A DNA stretch of 64,000 nt from Vitrella brassicaformis CCMP3155 (Eukaryota > Protista > Chromerida): positions 1,564 through 65,563 of the forward strand of contig CDMY01000494.1 in the NCBI GenBank assembly GCA_001179505.1, read 5' to 3'. How positions within the stretch are numbered: the first letter of the stretch is position 1; each line of letters begins with the position of its first letter. The notes below the pieces were generated by a model. The model searched no databases and was not told the DNA's origin. It saw only the letters and a program-made list of their open reading frames with translations. Shown here in pieces: positions 4,726 through 13,500 of this stretch. A program made the position numbers and the translations under genes.

Positions 4726-5853
4726 TCACTCATCGTGGAAGGTCTGCTGGATGCCGAGCCTATCATAGTCCATCCCCATCGACTGCATGAACCCCTCGGT
4801 TGCAGCCCAGCACCGCGGGTACCGACCATGGCCACCCTGCGCACCAGAGATGGGCTGCTCGAACGACCGCACGTCCACCCCAATGGCCGTGGGCCCTTCT
4901 CCGACAGACACCAGGGCTGCGTACGTGTCCTCCGCCTTGTCGCCCGCCAGCCCGATGTAGCGCACCTTGAAGTCCTCGGGCCACATGTACTCCAAGACGG
5001 TCTTGTCGGTGATCGGTTCGTCGAGCAGCTTCATGCCGTCGGCCTCGCTCACGTGCCCCCTGGCCAGCTGGCCTCTGGTCAGGTGCTCTCTGGGCACTGC
5101 AGGAAAGTCCAGGATGCTGATGGAGTGCGTGAGGATCCGCTGGTTGATGTAGCCGCTGAATGAGGGATAGATGAAGGAGAAGACGACATGCCGAGCGAGT
5201 ATGCGGATGGCAGGGTCCTTGGCCTCGAATGCTGCTTGGTATGGGTGGCCCTCGAGGCCTTCACGAGGCACGACAGCGATGTCCTCTGTGCCGATGCGGT
5301 ACTGGCGCCTTCGCAGCCGAGTCAGCCCGAGAGTGCCGTCCTGGTCAGTGTCCAGCTGCCCTCCGAAGGCGGCGAATTGCGCGATGGCGTGGGGCATGTT
5401 GGACATGGCTCTCTTGTAGGGGAAGGTCAGGTGGAGGGATGCGGGGCATATGGGGACGGGCAGGCTGTTGCTGCCGCTGATCATGCGCTTGTTGCGGGCG
5501 ATGTAGATGCCCTTGGTCCATCTCTTCCAGCCCTTGGTGACGTCCAACAGGTGCGCCGACCGCACAAGATAGTCGAAGTAGCTGAGGCCGACGGGCAGAG
5601 GAATGCTGGTCGGCTGACGCGACACGTCGAGCAGTCCGGTCATGCCCTCGGCCGCCAGGGATGCGTCGATGCGGTCGAGGATGAGTGCGGGTGTCACCCT
5701 GCGGTGTCCATCGGCCTTGTTGGTGCGCCGCAGTGCCACGCAGCTGGCCAGATCAGAGCAGAGGAGGATCAGTGAGAAGATGACCTCGTCGATGAGGCTG
5801 AAGAAGCACACGCCATCGGCGGAAGGAACGGACGTCTTGTCAGCTGGCGGCAT
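4726..5853 (-). CDS. Hypothetical single-exon protein with F-box-like N-terminus
   Basis: 375-aa intronless ORF with coding-like codon usage. N-terminal FSLIDEVIFSLILLCSDLASCVALRRT resembles an F-box-like motif. Confidence 0.6.
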   Translation of the reverse strand: MPPADKTSVPSADGVCFFSLIDEVIFSLILLCSDLASCVALRRTNKADGHRRVTPALILDRIDASLAAEGMTGLLDVSRQPTSIPLPVGLSYFDYLVRSAHLLDVTKGWKRWTKGIYIARNKRMISGSNSLPVPICPASLHLTFPYKRAMSNMPHAIAQFAAFGGQLDTDQDGTLGLTRLRRRQYRIGTEDIAVVPREGLEGHPYQAAFEAKDPAIRILARHVVFSFIYPSFSGYINQRILTHSISILDFPAVPREHLTRGQLARGHVSEADGMKLLDEPITDKTVLEYMWPEDFKVRYIGLAGDKAEDTYAALVSVGEGPTAIGVDVRSFEQPISGAQGGHGRYPRCWAATEGFMQSMGMDYDRLGIQQTFHDE

Positions 5854-5914: not shown

Positions 5915-6437
5915 TTGCGAACCGTTGCGTTTCTCGCCGAGACGGCCAGGAAAAAGAAAGCGCGCCTAGGAAAGAGCCAGAAAGACAGAGCGCCCTCTTT
6001 TGTTATCCGGCAGTCTGCGCCATTTTCTCTCCACCTCCATGGCTCCACCTCTTCTTCAAAGAGCAAACGGTTGCCCCCTCCCTCGCCGTCTTTCCGCGTC
6101 CTTGCCTCCCCCTGCCCTTCGCACCCGTCTCTTCGGCACACAGGAGACGAAGACCATGAATTGGAGACAGAGATGGTGGAGTCTCTGGGCCTCCCAGAAG
6201 ATTGCAACAAGGAGGCTTGGGCAATCGTACGCACCAAAGCAAAAGAAAGAAAACATGCAGATCATTTCCTTCCATGCACAGACCATTGGCCGGGTTCGAG
6301 AGGCCGTGCACTGGCTCTTTGGCACCGACGCCCTTCTTTTCGGCTCAGCAGCTTACAAGCTGGCTTTATGGGAGAGCGACGTCGACCTGTCAGCTGCCAT
6401 CCCGGCCGACAAGGCCGACCAGCTGCTGAGAGAGGGC
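5915..6437 (+). pseudogene. Rearranged partial duplicate of a Cid1-type nucleotidyltransferase gene carrying an intact catalytic exon (copy A)
   Basis: The exon from 6282 reads TIGRVREAVHWLFGTDALLFGSAAYKLALWESDVDL, the Pol-beta hGS-x-DhD motif. 6301-6437 is near-identical to 7361-7487, and 6081-6118 to 8331-8369. Confidence 0.7.
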
Positions 6438-7339
6438 GTGGTCGACGACCGTCAGCTGGCAGAGAGGGTTCACGAGCTTTCCATGAGGGAGAAGGCAGCA
6501 ATGAAGGAGTACGAAGCCGCCCAAAGGGAGAGGAAGGTTAAACACGATCTGAAACAAGTGGAGGTGAGACAAGAGTGGAAGGAGCAAGAGCACGCGGCGT
6601 TGAAAGCATCTTCTGTTTCATCCCAGCGGGATGTGGTGGACGACGGCCTCAACGGGCTGCTCGCAGGGGCGGGTGAGGGGGCCAGGGCCGGCTGGCGGTC
6701 TGGCCTGGATCACCGATCCGACGACGCTGGAGAGCTGCGCGAATGGGTGTGTTGACAGACAGACAGACAGACAGAAAGACAGTCGGACAGACATCTGCTG
6801 TGTCCGTGCTGGTCGGTCAGGATTCTGATTTCGTTTTGAGGTGACCCCTCTGGGCCAGCTTACGCCCATGAGCAACTCGCAGCTGCCCTCCCCACGGCAG
6901 CACTGGTACGACAACCGGCCCATCCTCTCACCAGTGCCGCCATCGAGGCCGCTGCCGGAGGGGGACGCACGGCTGAGCGGACTGGCGGGCGGCGCGTCTG
7001 CTGGTGGCCATAGCCTGGAGCTGAGTGCGTCGGTTGACGACACCATCAGCAAGCTGCGCGAGATCGCGCGCGGCTGGGGGCGGACAGGGCACTGAGGAGG
7101 GCACTGAGGAGAGCACTATGGCAGCGAGGGAGATAGCAGGTAGGCAAGAGGTCAGACAGACAAATCATGGCCGATAACCCTCACACGAGCCGTTCCCTCG
7201 TCTCCTTCCCTTCCCCGCCCCGCAGCGTTGCGCGAAAGTATCGCATGGCTAGAGAGAGAGTTGCAGACGAGCGGCGAGGAGGTGCTCAGGCTTCAGACGC
7301 TCATCGCCAGCAGCAGGTGGTTGACCAACAACCCACCAG

Positions 7340-9721
7340 AGCCCACGGCGCGGCTCCGATAGGCCGTGCACCGGCTCTTTGGCACCGACGCCCTTCTTTT
7401 CGGCTCAGCAGCTTACAAGCTGGCTTTATGGGAGACCGGCGCTCAGCTGTTCCGGCCGACAAGGCCGACCAGCTGCTGAGAGAGGGCTCGGCCAGGCAGG
7501 GGCGTCAGGATGTCCGGGTGTTGGCCTGTGAGAAGCTGAGGGATGACCTGAAGCATCGGGTGAGTGAAGGACAGGAAGGAACCCAGGAAGGAGAGAAAGA
7601 ACACGGAGACATGTGCGCTGCGTGCATGTCAACAGTATGGGGCCGACATGGCCATCCACGCACGAAATGGGGCGCGTGTGCCGATCGTGCACTGCCACCT
7701 ATCGAAGGTACCAAAGTGACACACATCAGATGATGGTTTGTGTCTGGTGTGTGTCTGGTCAGAGCCAAGGAAGGTGGAAGGCTGATGTGGCCTTTAACAA
7801 CGGCCTGGGAAGCCACAAGGCCAAGATCCTCCTCGCATATATGGAGTCTTCTCCAATTATCAGGGAGCTGGGTAAGCGGAGACACCGGTCACCGACCGTT
7901 TGCAAAACACAGTGTGACAATTCACGGCTTGCTCTGTTCCTCAGCCCTGCTGGTGAAGCGGTGGGCGAAGGGAAGGGGACTGTGCGGTGGCAGAGGGCTG
8001 ACGTCCTTGGGATGGGTGCTGCTTGTAATATACTACGATCAAATGAGGTAGACAAGCGGATGGATTCACACGGGATCACATGTTTCATGTTTTATGTCAG
8101 GACGCCACCTCTACTGCCCAACCTGCAGCAATCGTGTGGTGGCAGTCCTAGACGCGACGAGACGGTCACCACCTACGACTTCGACAAGGACGCATACATC
8201 AAACACAACGTACCTACGGGCAGATTGTAGCATGCAAAACAACTAATGACCCGTGTCTCTCCTGTGACTTAGGTTTACCCACTCGTCGACAAGTCCGACG
8301 CCGCTTTGCCTGCTCCCCCGATGAGCCACCCCTCGCCGTCTTTCCGCGTCCTTGCCTCCCCCCTGCCCTACGAGCACGTCCGTAGTGAGCAGGACAGAAG
8401 GCTCATGGCCTTTGTCAAGGATGCGGAAGACGAGCTCGGGTTTCTCGACCACATGAGGTGAGGCCTCAAAGATATAGGGGCGCAGGAGGGCTGCGCATGA
8501 CTGGCCTGTCTGTGGTCGTGCTGGTCAGGCGACGGCAGAACCGACATGCAGCCAACAGCCACAATCTCAAGCTGCACACAGTATTCTACGAATTTTTTTA
8601 CAGTGAGACAGCCGACTTCTATGCAGAATCAAACAGACCACAAACAGATTAACGCTTCTTCGTTTTTTTTGCTTGCGCCCCAGGTTCTATAGATCGTGGC
8701 TTGACGCCACGAAGCACATCATATCCATTCGCCTCGCCCCGCGCCGCATCACCAAGACGGATTATCTGGCATCTTCGGTGAGCGACAGCAAGAAGGAAGC
8801 GAGAAGAGCAGGACGAAATAGAAGCAAGTCTGTTGGCTTGTGTTTTGCAGGAGATCTCTGACAAAGAGGAATACAGGCAGCGGCTTGACGTGCGGAAACA
8901 AAGTCAGTAGAAAAGACTTGCAGGGATCACTCTCTGTGGCTGACGTTTTCAGCACCTATGGGTTGAGGACCCAATCGAGACAGGCAGTGTCCATTTCGTT
9001 GACGCCATGGTACACATACATACATACATACATACCTATGTGCCGTTCTTCTTCAGAAAAAACGAGAGATGGACCAGGAGATCGCTCGTGCCCTGGAGAT
9101 GCTGGCCCGCCACAATCCCCGAGTCCTGTTTGGTGAGATTGTGGCAGACAAGCTCTTCTACGGGCCTTCTCCTGGCCGCGGCCCGCCCCTCCATCGAGGC
9201 CCTGTACTGAAGACGTTCAAGATGAACTTGCCGGTATATGCAAATGAGACATAAGTCAAACAGATGAGATGAATGCACGGGGGCTCCTGTTTGCTTCAGG
9301 GGGATGGAGGCAGATATGTTGGCACAAAGGCGTGTGTCCTCAATCGCATCAAGGAGCTCTGCTCTCAGTTGGGAGGTGCGTAGACTGACACGTATCAACA
9401 TCGCAGGACACATCCATCCATCTTGACTGCCCTTACCAGGGGTGACCATCGAGACACCGTTGAGAGGCAGCATCAAAACAACTATCAACGTGTCAGGTGA
9501 GCGTCGCCACACGACCCGGACACAGAGCGACACTATCACGCCTCCCTTGCCTGGTTCCAACAGGCCCCGAAGCAGCTGTCTCCGCGGCACTGGGATACCT
9601 CAACATGATCAAAACAGGCAAGCGCCTACCCGACCAGCCGTCCACATCACCAGCCCCTGGTACGTATTCCAACCAGACACCAACCTGGACCACGCGGGGC
9701 CCGCCACGGAAGAAGGGATGA
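7340..9721 (+). pseudogene. Cid1/TUT-family terminal nucleotidyltransferase with C-terminal KH domain (copy B; catalytic exon inactivated)
   Basis: Spliced exons give GARVPIV, ADVAFNNGLGSHKAKILLAY, ALLVKRWAKGRGL..LTSLGWVLLVIYY, RTPPLLPNLQ, YEFF..FYRSWLDATKHIISIR, LWVEDPIE and EMDQEIARALEML, then a KH-like segment. Lesions: TAG at 7360-7362, a net -10 nt change removing DxD, and a T-run frameshift near 8595. Coiled-coil 5' exons probably extend to about 6440. Confidence 0.8.
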
Positions 9722-10573
9722 CATGGGGCGGCACCAAGCACTTCACGGCCGATGACGTGGGGTGGTGTCGGTGTGTGATTCTGTTACTTGCAAGCCGGTG
9801 AAAGAACACAAACCACTTTAACCGAGCCAGGCAGGGAGCCAGCTGGAAGTAGTCGCAGCCTGTATGGCCCGTCGCCCTGCTTCTATCTACAGGTGTTTTG
9901 CTCTTATCGGTGTCTACATTTTATGTTGTGGTGTCTCTTCTCTGCCCATCTCTGCTACGCCTTGCCCTTCTCTGGGATGACTTTCGTTCGGATCTCCCAC
10001 AGGTCTATTGCTTTCAATCGGCGTCTTCTCGTACGTGTGCGTATGGCAAGAGACATGTGAAGAGGTTGTTTAGCTCGATGCCACGCAGAGTATCACTCCG
10101 CTTATGCCTGTGTCTCTTTCAATCGTGCACTATACCAGCTCAGCATACGCTGGCACCCTCTCTCTGTCTCACAGACATCGTTCGCAAAGTCCGTTCGCAC
10201 TAGTGAATGCCGCAAAAACGGAAAGAAACCACTGATGCAGGCGATGACGCAAATGCAACATTTGGCCCTCTTCATGCATGGATGGGGAAAATGTAGGGAG
10301 GAAGCAAGGAGAGGACACATCAACCATAGCCAAGAACTATTAGACACATGGCCCCAGCCAGCAAGGATCATGCCCATACATTCAACACCCAAACTTTGTG
10401 TGACAGTCTGTTTTAGCTGCCACTTGGCATCACTGCAAGCCACACACAAGTACAAACGCATTTGACCGGCAGCTCAGTCGATTCTTGCACTGTTCTCTGC
10501 CTTGCGTACCCATTCATCATCCGATATCGTGTCGCCTGTCGCCGCTGCTGCTGCTGCCGCTGCATAAAGCCAA

Positions 10574-13500
10574 TCAGATATGGATGACGGGTGATGGCGT
10601 GCTTGCTTTGTCTATGGTAGACTGGGTACCGGCAGGTCGTTCTGGTGGCGGTAGGCTGCCCGTCTCTCTCAGGTGTGTCAGCAGTTCCACAGACTTTTTC
10701 ACGGCCCCCTCGGTGCCTGCACATATCAAGGAGAAAAACGATTTCGCATCTCCTTCGATTGACCAATATTTTTCCTATCGATTGACCTTTTATTCTTATT
10801 TTCATGTCCCCGGTTTCCCTCCTCTTGGGCACGTCGATCTTCACCGCGACTGTGGCCCACCACCCACACACGCACAAAGAGCAGACACATACATCTTGCT
10901 TCCTGCTTCCGAATTGTGCACATATCCTCCGCTTACATTGGCCGCCGATTTATGATTTGGTTGATCGTGTCGCCTCTCCGGCCGAGGATCAGCCCCCTCT
11001 CGGTCTGATACAGGAATGAAACCGCCACACACACATGTGTGCACGTATAACTCAGGTATCAGAATGTATTTGCTCACCGGCGAGTTCATCTTGAATTTCT
11101 CGCGGACGAGCTTGCCGGGCCTTGGCGGGTTTGCCGGCAGATGGCCGATGACTTCATCGATGCTCTGGCCCGCCGCCAGGGACTTGAGGGTGCGATCAAA
11201 CTCGTGCATCATCCGGGCGCGCATCTGAAGAGGAGCATCAGAGGCAGAGACATGTGCGTGTGCATTCATCTGTGGCTCCATGCAATCGTCTGTATACCTG
11301 CGGCTTCACCGTGTACATGCGGTCGGTCTCTATCGGGTCCTCGACCCACATGTCCTGAAGAGGCAGGGGAACTTCTCGCTCGCATCAAAGCAGGCCGTTT
11401 GTCCATTCATTTTGTTGCTGTGTACCTCGGGGTGGTCAGTGTAGTCCGTCTCCCTATCGTCGGCCCTCTGTGATGTCTGCACACGCACATGCCAAATGCC
11501 GTGATGTGGTCTCCCCTCTCTCCTTCTCATGTCACCTACACTGGCGCTGTCTGTGTTGATGTATTTCCTCTGTCGTCGGTGTCGCTGCAGGTATTCTTCC
11601 TTGGTGACGACGTCGGGGGCCAGGCGGATGGCGACGACGTATTTGCGGAAATCGAACTGCTCCTTGTAGAAACTAAACAAGACAGAATCAAAGGAGAGAA
11701 GGTACAGAAGCAGGGTTTTGGGCCGTGTCTCCATCCCTCCCTCCATCTCCCTGTGTGTGCACATGTGAAGCTTATTTACCTAAAAAACTCATACATGAGC
11801 TGGGGCAGCTCGAGATTCGCGCCGTTGGCGGCGTAGGGGTTCAGCCGTCGCCTGACACACACACATACATGAGCTCGATAAGTGTCTAAGCGGAAATCCT
11901 GTCTACGGCTCAATTCACCTGAATTTCCTTCTTCCCTCCAGCTCCCGTCTTGCCTCCTTGGTCTGCTGGCTGACCTCGTTGTCGCTGTCGCTGTCGTCCA
12001 TGACGGCGGCCTGCGTGGAGGGGGAGGGAGCAGACGTCTGGCTGCTGGACTGGGTAGCGGGGGAGGGGCCCGGAAGCGATCGATGCGACGACTGTGGGGT
12101 GGAGAGCGGGGGCCGTGTCTCCTCAGTGGGTGGGTCCTGGAACCAGACCTGATGGGGTGATATGAGGGAAAAGGATGAACCGTTGCTGGACCTCTCTCTC
12201 TTGTGCCTCTTCTGTACATCATGTTCGAGGGCAGCCCGCCTCTTGAAGTCATGTGTGTGCTCCAGGTGCTTGGGCGGCGCCGAGCCGTCTTGAGGCTTCT
12301 ATAGATTTGGCAGCAGCGGTGGGCTCCTAATGAAGACACACAAACGCACAGCCGAACACCGGTCAAGTTGTACACTCCCTTCTCAGTTGATGCACTTGAA
12401 TCACCTTGTTTGTGCCCAAAACACCAAGAGCAGCATCCAGACATACTTCGATAAACACCCGCTGCCCGTCTCCGCCAGCGCCCTCACCTTCACCCACATC
12501 TTGATGAGCCACCCTGCAGACAAGGCCCGCAGTGGCGCAAACAAGTCAAGGACTTTGCAATCCGCGTGTATATCAGTTTGTTACCCAGCATGTGTACGGC
12601 TCTCGACGAATGAAAGTAGGCCCGGAGGAGGTGGGAGTTGTGGATGCCCAAAGGATTGTTGAAAGTAATCTCAACCTTCCCATGGGCATCCCCCTAGCCA
12701 GACATGAACGTACACACAGAACACGAGAGGCCACACAATGCATTTATTGTGCTTGTCGGCACTGTATGGTGTGTACATGTCGCAGCGTGCAGCGCACGAT
12801 GGGAGTTCGCGCGCGACTGATGGGCACCGTCTCCATCTCAAAATTGTAATTCTGACAGGAACCCATACAGACAGACAGACAGACAGACAAAGAGAGAGAG
12901 ACAAAGAAACAAAGAGACAAAGAGATCCGTGAGCATCCGATGTGGTGTTTCCGCGTCTTGTCTGTTCTATTCTTCTTCCGTCCTTCAGATACTTGTCCAC
13001 GAGCTCACACGCCCGGCCACGGGGGTCGACGGCTCTCGACCGCTGCCTCTCGTCCATGAGCCTCGCCATCTGCTGTTGGGGGATGGTGGCGACGAGGTCG
13101 ATGTCGCTGCTCTTCATGGCCAAGTTCTAGACGTATGAGCCGAAGAGGGTGATGTTGGCCGTGTCTAAGACGTGCTTGACGGCCACCCGTACTCGGCCCA
13201 TCGTCTGTTTAGAGGGAGACAGAGAAATGTGTGTGCCTTCACTCTTATCTTTCACGTACCTCTGCCCAAGCCTGGATCTCCCGATCTCCCAAGGGGTTCC
13301 GGCGGTTCGCTGTCAGCGCTTCTTGCTGCATGTCGGCCTGCTTCTGTGTGGGGACCGGGAGAAGGACAGTGCACGGCCGGCTCTGCGTCCACAGCCAAGA
13401 ATGGGCGATGGATGCCTTTCTTTCAAGCTTTCATTGCCCACCTCTGTCTTCTTGATGCGCTCGAGGTCCTGCAAAGCCGCTTCGAGATCCTCTTTCTGAA

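What the first reader, a model, noticed from the sequence alone, without database searches (positions are those of the whole stretch)
7340..9721. Cid1-type terminal nucleotidyltransferase fused to a C-terminal KH RNA-binding domain
Seen: hand-splicing gives the ordered Cid1/TUT motifs (ARVPIV, D..FNN, LLVKRWAK, PPLLPNL, FY..IISIR, WVEDP, final helix). These run in phase through three more introns into FKMNLP/GDGGRYVGTKACVLNRIKELCSQLG/GVTIETPLRGSIKTTINVS/GPEAAVSAALGYLNMI, which has type I KH spacing. Known: TUTases and non-canonical PAPs usually gain RNA specificity from CCHC zinc knuckles, RRMs or partner proteins; C. elegans GLD-2 partners the KH protein GLD-3. Inference: this family builds its RNA-targeting module into the enzyme, a possibly undescribed RNA-tailing system. 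I do not recall this fusion, but I have not searched for it.
Basis: partly seen in the sequence, partly recalled or inferred. Interest (0 to 1): 0.82.

Follow-up and report, generated by a model that had tools for sequence, protein, structure and literature searches.

The report
Decayed RNA-tailing enzyme with KH tail
This gene of the alga Vitrella brassicaformis descends from an RNA-tailing enzyme (Cid1/TUTase type) joined to a KH RNA-binding domain, a pairing I could not find described, but this copy has lost its catalytic motif and every related copy found is also broken.

Summary
The window is Vitrella brassicaformis CCMP3155 contig CDMY01000494.1. The finding matches public gene model CEM17692.1 (465 aa, window 7428-9721).

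The Cid1-type motifs are present in order. A GT-AG path runs them in phase through three short introns into a KH-like tail.

The tail is KH-like by several weak but agreeing tests:
- The four best PDB sequence hits are KH domains.
- The top fold matches are KH type I.
- Pfam KH_1 is below threshold.
- The GxxG loop reads GTKA.

A convergent paralogue at 10574-13290 has the same exon and intron layout and a canonical GRRG loop. The fusion therefore predates their split.

This copy cannot be an active enzyme:
- Its first NTase exon (7337-7487) duplicates 6277-6437, with an in-frame TAG and a 10-bp deletion that removes the DxD motif.
- Two exons conserved in the paralogue break the reading frame.
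- The public model reads the PAP-associated region out of frame and skips the WVEDP exon.

The paralogue has two in-frame TAGs and a 5-nt deletion in its KH exon. Copies on another contig are fragments. No intact NTase-KH protein turned up in my searches. No RNA data were available.

Verdict: a real, apparently undescribed fusion, seen here only as decaying copies. Another first-stage note in this scan covers the same stretch.

The parts
6173..6437 (+). Upstream 5' exons plus intact copy A of the first NTase exon (6282-6437: ...LFGSAAYKLALWESDVDLSAAIPADKADQLLREG). It forms the start of a separate public 257-aa model (6173-7095).
   Evidence: Pfam NTP_transf_2, E 2.6e-4, 21.7 bits against a cutoff of 21. 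It is 44% identical to the paralogue's first NTase exon and shares an intron position with it. Annotation.
6438..7336 (+). Coiled-coil and low-complexity N-terminal module lying between the two NTase exon copies. It is colinear with residues ~27-300 of paralogue CEM05504.1 (P0006) and with a repeated module of CEM35440.1 (P0008).
   Evidence: tblastn of P0006 against the window; blastn at 84.6% to L002 10101-10975; P0008 sequence.
7337..7559 (+). Damaged copy B of the first NTase exon. It has TAG at 7360-7362 and a 10-bp deletion after 7443 that removes SDVDL (the DxD) and shifts the frame. Public model CEM17692.1 starts at the ATG at 7428.
   Evidence: Repeat D1/D2; alignments; P0001 sequence.
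7636..8457 (+). Five NTase-core exons: 7636-7707, 7763-7871 (third carboxylate, KADVAFNN), 7945-8047 (LLVKRWAK), 8101-8209 (PPLLPNL) and 8273-8457.
   Evidence: GT-AG sites and phases; alignment with S. japonicus Cid16 and P0006; paralogue matches.
8529..8602 (+). Exon conserved in the paralogue (RRQNRHAANSHNLKLHTVFYEFFY; 56% identical). It leaves in phase 1 where the next exon needs phase 2. The donor region reads acagtgagac, against ttag|gtaaat in the paralogue.
   Evidence: The DNA is confirmed by independent contigs.
8684..9009 (+). PAP-associated region: 8684-8777 (FYRSWLDATKHIISIR), 8851-8906 (EISDKEEYRQR..., with 2 extra nt 'ca' before the donor) and 8953-9009 (HLWVEDPIETG). The public model reads the first two in shifted frames and skips the third.
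9057..9233 (+). Last helix of the PAP-associated region, a linker, and KH strand beta1 (KTFKMNLP).
   Evidence: 100% match to P0001 residues 311-369; the KFKMN.P motif and the intron position are shared with the paralogue.
9300..9721 (+). KH-like tail in three exons: 9300-9375 (the GxxG position reads GTKA), 9440-9496 and 9564-9721 (stop codon 9719-9721).
   Evidence: PDB phmmer top 4 hits are KH domains: vigilin E 0.007, then PCBP2, hnRNP K and PCBP1. Pfam KH_1 E 0.05. AF2 model pLDDT 75.6. Foldseek and VIA top hits are KH type I.
10574..13290 (-). Convergent paralogue (gene 2) with the same layout and a canonical KH loop (GRRG). Its lesions are TAG at 13129-13127, TAG at 12301-12299, no usable GT donor after the first NTase exon, and a 5-nt deletion in KH exon 1 (11004-10937). 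The public annotation splits it into 101-aa and 204-aa models.

Best explanation
The gene at 7337-9721 is a decaying, catalytically dead duplicate of a lineage-specific Cid1-family non-canonical poly(A)/poly(U) polymerase that had a type I KH domain fused to its C-terminus.

Inferred history. The ancestral gene ran: 5' exons, NTase palm, PAP/OAS1-type substrate-binding (PAP-associated) region, linker, KH. In such an enzyme the KH would hold single-stranded RNA next to the active site, so the enzyme would choose its own substrates. That function is inferred from what the domain families do; nothing here tests it. The gene duplicated into two types, gene 1 and gene 2. Pieces were later copied to at least one other contig.

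Shown for this copy. The first NTase exon is a damaged duplicate with an in-frame TAG and a 10-bp deletion of the DxD. Two conserved exons no longer fit the reading frame. The KH loop has lost its second glycine.

Inferred outcome. At most, the locus yields the annotated 465-aa product: no metal-binding DxD, a partly out-of-frame PAP-associated region, and a KH-like tail. That product cannot add nucleotides.
For: 1. Organism and gene model.
2. Damaged first NTase exon. 7337-7487 duplicates 6277-6437. Copy B has TAG where copy A has GAG and the L002 copy has AAG, and a 10-bp gap exactly over SDVDL. P0001 starts after the deletion and scores only 15 bits on MTPAP-like_central.
3. Frame breaks. 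Exons 8529-8602 and 8851-8906 are conserved in gene 2 (56% and 55% identity) but break the frame. The DNA there is confirmed with 0 differences by contigs from two studies.
4. No sign of constraint. Exons of gene 1 diverge from its closest paralogue about as much as introns do, 8.4% against 10.4%.
5. The fusion is ancestral. Gene 2 has the same exon order, and the introns flanking and splitting the KH have the same phases: 0, 1, 1. The closely related L002 copy shows the undamaged phase 1.
6. KH identity. The L002 KH exon hits FUBP, KHSRP and Nova KH domains, best E 6.3e-5. Gene 2's KH exon gives Pfam KH_1 E 0.0084.
7. Every copy seen is defective. Gene 2 has two TAGs and a 5-nt deletion. P0006 lacks everything after the LLVKRWAK exon. 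The gene-2-like copy on L002 lacks the NTase part and the last two KH exons.
Against: - No RNA data could be laid on the locus, so the real splice pattern and expression are unknown.
- About 155 codons from 9057 to 9718 are still open and all splice sites there are intact. That fits a very recent loss, or continued use of the tail.
- An in-phase path exists if the two frame-breaking exons are skipped.
- Copy A, 1 kb upstream, still encodes an intact G-S/DxD motif.
- Gene 2 exons diverge less than its introns against the L002 copy (3.7% against 9.9%), so that type was under constraint until recently.
- The searches for intact relatives were word-based or used one 59-aa exon, so an intact copy could have been missed.
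Confidence: 0.67

Rival explanations
1. The locus is expressed roughly as annotated (CEM17692.1). It works as a pseudoenzyme: a catalytically dead NTase/PAP-associated scaffold with a KH-like tail that binds RNA or partner proteins, as dead TENT-like or GLD-3-type KH scaffolds do.
For: The tail from 9057 to 9721 is open with intact GT-AG sites. A public model exists. The third carboxylate and the core helices are kept. KH domains without GxxG are known as protein platforms; GLD-3 (3n89) is among the structural matches at Z 7.2.
Against: The annotated product reads about 50 residues of the PAP-associated region out of frame and drops the WVEDP exon, which would probably disrupt the fold. The Atlas model of it is poor, pTM 0.42. 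Exon and intron divergence are similar. There is no expression evidence.
Confidence: 0.2
2. An active NTase-KH enzyme is still made here. The intact upstream NTase exon (copy A, 6282-6437) is spliced across about 1 kb to the sequence after the damaged copy B, and the two frame-breaking exons are skipped.
For: Copy A has a perfect FGS...DVD motif. A GT sits directly after its last codon at 6438. In-frame AG acceptors exist at 7497-7499 and 7506-7508, read from the sequence. The exon-skipping path is open.
Against: - The 1 kb that would have to be an intron is coding sequence in paralogue P0006 and is annotated as a separate gene.
- The candidate acceptors lack the pyrimidine tract seen before every other acceptor of this gene.
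- Skipping 8529-8602 removes the first helix of the PAP-associated domain, which is conserved in the paralogue and in Cid16.
- Three unusual splicing events would all be required.
Confidence: 0.06
3. The C-terminal tail of this gene is not a KH domain. It is a small alpha/beta segment that resembles KH by chance, so no RNA-binding module was ever fused here.
For: Pfam KH_1 is below its gathering score (13.8 against 21.5 bits). No Foldseek hit reaches E 1e-3. VIA Z scores of 7-8 are shared with ferredoxin-like and designed folds. GxxG is absent. Exon-level similarity to gene 2's KH is weak, E 0.01 to 0.8.
Against: The four best of 177,635 PDB sequences are all KH domains, aligned from end to end. 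About half of the top 50 structural matches are KH type I. The tail sits at the same place, with the same three intron phases, as a canonical GRRG/GRGG KH in the paralogue type.
Confidence: 0.07

Closest known systems
Cid1-family non-canonical poly(A)/poly(U) polymerases (S. pombe Cid1, S. japonicus Cid16, HESO1/URT1, TENT2/GLD-2)
   Same: The NTase palm and PAP/OAS1 substrate-binding motifs are colinear with Cid16 (FGS..SD.D, D.xFNN, VK.WAK, PPLLPNLQQS, FF.FY...IS.R). The nearest Atlas clusters are MTPAP-like_central plus PAP_assoc.
   Different: This copy lacks the FGS/DxD exon content and has frame breaks. The family members listed here carry no KH domain. The ancestral Vitrella gene had one at its C-terminus.
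GLD-2 with GLD-3 (C. elegans) and PAPD4 with QKI-7 (human): a non-canonical PAP recruited by a separate KH protein
   Same: The same two activities are combined: a Cid1-type polymerase and a KH-type module, presumably for RNA selection. This rests on established knowledge of those pairs, named in PMC7470959 found. GLD-3 KH domains are among the structural matches.
   Different: There the KH protein is a separate polypeptide. Here the KH is in the same gene, which would be a 'Rosetta stone' fusion. No function has been shown here.
TUT1/Star-PAP (RRM fused) and TUT4/TUT7 (CCHC knuckles fused)
   Same: A Cid1-type polymerase carries its own RNA-binding module in cis (the Atlas rows for Star-PAP show RRM_1).
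   Different: The fused module here is KH type I rather than RRM or a zinc knuckle, and it is C-terminal. I found no cluster of 50 or more proteins with PAP_assoc plus KH_1.
Unprocessed pseudogenes from segmental duplication
   Same: The copies retain introns, carry nonsense codons, small frame-shifting indels and a lost splice donor, are truncated on another contig, and show exon divergence close to intron divergence for gene 1.
   Different: The C-terminal third is still open and spliceable. Public annotation calls the locus protein-coding.

Membership tests
Cid1/TENT family (Pol-beta-type NTase with PAP/OAS1 substrate-binding domain) | Helix-turn motif hG[GS] followed by the first two catalytic carboxylates (DxD/E) | tested here: not met
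   Deleted or shifted in the gene's own exon at 7337-7487, and absent from P0001. Present only in upstream fragment 6282-6437 (NTP_transf_2, E 2.6e-4).
Cid1/TENT family (Pol-beta-type NTase with PAP/OAS1 substrate-binding domain) | Third catalytic carboxylate on the next strand (D.xFN motif) and the core VK.WAK / PPxLPxL helices | tested here: met
   KADVAFNN, LLVKRWAK and PPLLPNLQQS align with Cid16 CDMSFNG, MVKFWAK and PPLLPNLQQS. phmmer P0001 against Cid16: E 1.6e-7.
Cid1/TENT family (Pol-beta-type NTase with PAP/OAS1 substrate-binding domain) | Intact PAP-associated domain (Pfam PF03828) | tested here: inconclusive
   No PF03828 hit for P0001 or for single exons at E<=1-10. The motifs FYRSWLD..IISIR and WVEDP are visible in conserved frames but cannot be joined in frame with exon 8529-8602. 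Gene 2's 204-aa model carries a weak precomputed PAP_assoc hit.
Cid1/TENT family (Pol-beta-type NTase with PAP/OAS1 substrate-binding domain) | Template-independent nucleotide addition to RNA 3' ends | not testable with these tools
   This needs a biochemical assay.
KH type I domain (PF00013) | Score above the Pfam gathering threshold | tested here: not met
   P0001:355-440 scores 13.8 bits, E 0.05, against a cutoff of 21.5. Gene 2's KH exon 1 alone scores 16.3 bits, E 0.0084. The joined exons of gene 2 were not searched (see referred steps).
KH type I domain (PF00013) | GxxG loop between helices alpha1 and alpha2 | tested here: not met
   Gene 1 reads GTKA, aligned to GTKG of vigilin KH8. The loop is present in gene 2 (GRRG) and in the L002 copy (GRGG).
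KH type I domain (PF00013) | beta-alpha-alpha-beta-beta-alpha topology | tested here: inconclusive
   The AF2 single-sequence model (pLDDT 75.6) gives beta, loop, alpha, beta, beta, alpha, and alpha1 is not helical. Foldseek top hits are KH at E about 1e-2 and TM 0.5-0.6. VIA gives Z 7-8 for KH domains but also for other alpha/beta folds.
Unprocessed pseudogene | Disabling changes relative to intact relatives, in verified sequence | tested here: met
   TAG at 7360-7362 and the 10-bp deletion; frame clashes at 8602/8684 and 8906/8953. DNA 8333-10900 was confirmed by independent contigs, and no indel was reported elsewhere.
Unprocessed pseudogene | Lack of a functional transcript or protein | not testable with these tools
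   No RNA run holds the stretch. The runs laid were DNA contigs.

The most novel reading that the evidence does not exclude
Vitrella, and perhaps other chromerids or alveolates, still makes an intact Cid1-type polymerase with a built-in KH domain. It would come either from an unannotated or unassembled paralogue, or from this locus by splicing from the intact upstream NTase exon. It would be a self-targeting RNA-tailing enzyme, fusing in one chain the polymerase and KH partners that animals keep as GLD-2/GLD-3 or PAPD4/QKI-7.
Probability: 0.15. Interest if true: 0.6.

Novelty: new variant of a known kind. Interest (0 to 1): 0.35.

Why it matters
A polymerase-KH fusion would be a natural 'Rosetta stone' for the link between non-canonical poly(A)/poly(U) polymerases and KH proteins, known in animals only as separate partners. 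It would show that a protist lineage solved substrate targeting in cis. As found, the value is mostly evolutionary and for annotation. It documents a shuffled, decaying Cid1-like gene family in Vitrella. It also shows that CEM17692.1 and its neighbours (the 257-aa model, CEM17694.1 and the 204-aa model) are fragments of two broken genes rather than four genes. It becomes functionally interesting only if an intact member is found.

Tried and rejected
- RNA evidence. The look-up of sequencing runs found only DNA-type holders, and the one run guessed to be RNA held none of the stretch. Read laying showed contigs running through introns, so splicing could not be tested.
- Exon-by-exon Pfam scans. 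Most exons are too short, and only two gave hits.
- MAFFT alignments of single exons to full-length proteins (A3, A4). Fragments were misplaced, so I did not use these as profiles. A cleaner one (A6) found no new relative with KH.
- TAG as a sense codon. I considered this because three in-frame TAGs fall at sense positions (E/K, Y and Q in relatives). I rejected it as the main reading. The three positions correspond to different residues, each is one base away from the relative's codon, the same genes also carry indels, and the annotators ended model CEM17694.1 at one of these TAGs. It was not tested genome-wide.
- Non-canonical splicing as a rescue for the frame clashes. Every other intron of both genes is GT-AG. 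The clashes match small indels seen against the paralogue or the L002 copy.
- Ka/Ks. There are too few differences for a firm value, so I report only exon-against-intron divergence.
Full report
**Identity of the locus.** A phmmer search with the 59-aa exon 9057-9233 against 1.84 billion representatives found one full match, P0001 (465 aa, residues 311-369). P0001 is CEM17692.1 / A0A0G4FSK1, 'PAP-associated domain-containing protein' of Vitrella brassicaformis CCMP3155. It lies on contig CDMY01000494.1, and the window begins at contig base 1564. The public model spans window 7428-9721. Its neighbours are a 257-aa model at 6173-7095 (+ strand), and 204-aa and 101-aa models on the minus strand at 10933-12001 and 12299-12836.

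**Check of the observation.** I mapped the exons by hand and checked them by script. One path runs 7452-7559, 7636-7707, 7763-7871, 7945-8047, 8101-8209, 8273-8457, 8684-8777, 8953-9009, 9057-9233, 9300-9375, 9440-9496, 9564-9721. Every junction uses a GT donor and an AG acceptor, and the only stop is the terminal TGA. The three introns inside the tail are 66, 64 and 67 nt long, with phases 0, 1 and 1. DNA contigs from three runs in two studies match 8333-10900 without a single difference. The in-phase run into the tail is therefore real and not an assembly artefact.

- 7337-7487 is a direct repeat of 6277-6437.
- The upstream copy A reads ...LFGSAAYKLALWESDVDLSAAIPADKADQLLREG. It passes Pfam NTP_transf_2 (E 2.6e-4, 21.7 bits, cutoff 21).
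- Copy B, the one that belongs to the finding, has TAG at 7360-7362 where copy A has GAG and a close paralogue has AAG.
- Copy B also has a 10-bp deletion after 7443 that removes SDVDL and shifts the frame.
- The public model therefore starts at an ATG just after the deletion and has no G-S or DxD motif. It scores only 15 bits on MTPAP-like_central.

Exons 8529-8602 (RRQNRHAANSHNLKLHTVFYEFFY) and 8851-8906 (EISDKEEYRQR...) are conserved in the paralogue but break the frame.
- The first leaves in phase 1 where exon 8684 needs phase 2. Its donor region reads acagtgagac, against ttag|gtaaat in the paralogue.
- The second has two extra bases before its donor.
- Including both gives three stops downstream.
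- The public model copes by reading 8684-8777 and 8851-8902 in shifted frames and skipping the WVEDP exon.

**Is the tail a KH domain?** For this copy the evidence is weak but consistent.
- Pfam KH_1 gives E 0.05 and 13.8 bits, below the cutoff of 21.5.
- phmmer against PDB puts four KH domains on top: vigilin KH8 (E 0.007), PCBP2, hnRNP K KH3 and PCBP1. All are aligned from beta1 to alpha3.
- A single-sequence AlphaFold model has mean pLDDT 75.6 and the order beta, loop, alpha, beta, beta, alpha.
- Foldseek's top hits are KH type I at E about 1e-2, with none at or below 1e-3.
- VIA-align gives Z 7-8 for the KH domains of MEX-3C, N4BP1, Nova-1, KHNYN and GLD-3. Other small alpha/beta folds score at the same level.
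- The GxxG loop reads GTKA.

**The paralogue settles the homology.**
- It has the same exon order and the same intron phases through the core: phase 1 after the FNN exon and phase 2 after the WAK exon.
- It also matches around the KH: phase 0 after KFKMNSP and phase 1 after the second KH exon.
- Its first KH exon reads TERGLILGRRGDTINQI and gives Pfam KH_1 E 0.0084 from 22 residues alone.
- A 91%-identical copy of that exon on contig CDMY01000359.1 (L002) reads TERGLILGRGGETINKITRMCGGL. It hits FUBP1, FUBP2, Nova-1, KHSRP and IGF2BP KH domains, with a best E of 6.3e-5.
- Exon-by-exon similarity between the tails of the two gene types is low but in register: E 0.024, 0.010 and 0.82.
- I conclude that the NTase-PAP_assoc-KH arrangement existed before the two types diverged. 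They are about 40% identical in the conserved exons.

**All copies seen are damaged.**
- Gene 2 in the window has TAG at 13129-13127, where gene 1 has Tyr, and TAG at 12301-12299, where gene 1 has Gln.
- Gene 2 has no usable GT donor in phase after its first NTase exon.
- Gene 2 has a 5-nt deletion in KH exon 1 relative to the L002 copy. This changes the exit phase from 1 to 2 and throws the last two KH exons out of frame. The annotators split it into two short models, one ending at a TAG.
- On L002, the gene-1-like copy (P0006, CEM05504.1) has an intact DxD and a long N-terminal module. Homology stops inside the LLVKRWAK exon, and no later exons follow.
- The gene-2-like copy on L002 covers only 1.1 kb, from the end of exon 5 to KH exon 1.
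- Two more degenerate NTase-exon fragments lie at L002 8760-8870 and 9661-9771.
- Gene 1 exons differ from P0006's by 8.4% against 10.4% for introns, which is about neutral.
- Gene 2 exons differ from the L002 copy by 3.7% against 9.9% for introns, which suggests more recent constraint.

**Structure of the 5' region.** The 0.9 kb between copies A and B (6438-7336) is colinear with the N-terminal ~300 residues of P0006. Part of it is a module repeated twice in an unrelated protein, P0008 (CEM35440.1). Gene 2 has no such insert. The simplest reading is that a module was inserted into the first NTase exon together with a 150-bp duplication. After that, one of the two exon copies decayed at each locus: copy B here, and the upstream copies on L002. 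This is inference.

**Search for intact relatives and prior description.**
- Three word-based searches used P0001, P0006 and a profile of both gene types. Together with the exon phmmer search, they returned only Vitrella fragments, S. japonicus Cid16 and one 711-aa Logan protein without KH.
- The ESM Atlas neighbours are ordinary MTPAP-like_central/PAP_assoc clusters. Separately there are KH clusters. None has both domains.
- Full-text searches for KH with TUTase, PAP-associated or Vitrella terms found only papers where KH proteins are separate partners of GLD-2-type enzymes.
- These searches have limited reach. They show that the fusion is not widely annotated, not that it is unique.
- Other first-stage notes of this scan mention further shuffled Cid1-like genes in this genome. 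I did not test them.

**Limits.**
- No RNA data were available.
- All exon work was done by reference, exon by exon. Whole-protein tests used only the public model P0001.
- As a result, gene 2's complete KH and the conserved-frame PAP-associated region of gene 1 were not scored as wholes.

**Verdict.** The gene at 7340-9721 is most likely an unprocessed pseudogene (about 0.67). It could instead be a dead paralogue with a residual KH-like tail (about 0.2). It is not an active tailing enzyme.

Noticed in passing
window 10574-13290 (minus strand): A convergent paralogue has a canonical KH loop (GRRG) but two in-frame TAG codons (13129-13127 and 12301-12299), a 5-nt deletion in KH exon 1, and no in-phase GT donor after the first NTase exon. 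Public annotation splits it into CEM17694.1 (101 aa) and a 204-aa model.
   Followed up: yes
window 7360-7362, 13129-13127, 12301-12299: All three premature stops in the two genes are TAG. Both genes end in TGA. Other notes of this scan mention in-frame TAGs in other Vitrella genes. I read them as nonsense mutations, but TAG read-through or recoding in Vitrella was not tested genome-wide.
   Followed up: partly
window 6080-6112 and 8330-8362: An identical 33-bp direct repeat encodes PSPSFRVLASP both upstream of the gene and inside exon 8273-8457. It is another sign of small-scale sequence shuffling at this locus.
   Followed up: partly
window 6640-7100; P0008 (CEM35440.1): The module ...DDGLNGLLAGAGEG...QLPSPRQHWYDNRPILSPVPPSRPLPE...SLELSASVDDTISKLREIA... 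also occurs twice in tandem in an 891-aa protein with no NTase domain (only weak Pfam hits, e.g. FOP_dimer at E 0.17), and in P0006. It looks like a mobile coding module.
   Followed up: partly
L002 (CDMY01000359.1, reversed) 6401-7482 and 8760-12196: A second contig carries fragments of both paralogue types next to each other, plus two degenerate copies of the first NTase exon. Public models there (568 aa and 572 aa) look like chimaeras of fragments.
   Followed up: partly
window 5171-5290: DNA contigs of all three genomic runs skip 118 bases here (ends TG..GT). The contigs overlapping 5290-5552 carry 5-10 base differences. This is a structural difference between the assembly and the reads, or a collapsed repeat.
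   Followed up: no
window 6773-6969: No Logan contig from any of the three DNA runs lies on this stretch, and reads seem to be cut at the repeats 6744-6793 and 9007-9044 (tetranucleotide repeats such as CAGA and CATA). The hole is unexplained.
   Followed up: no
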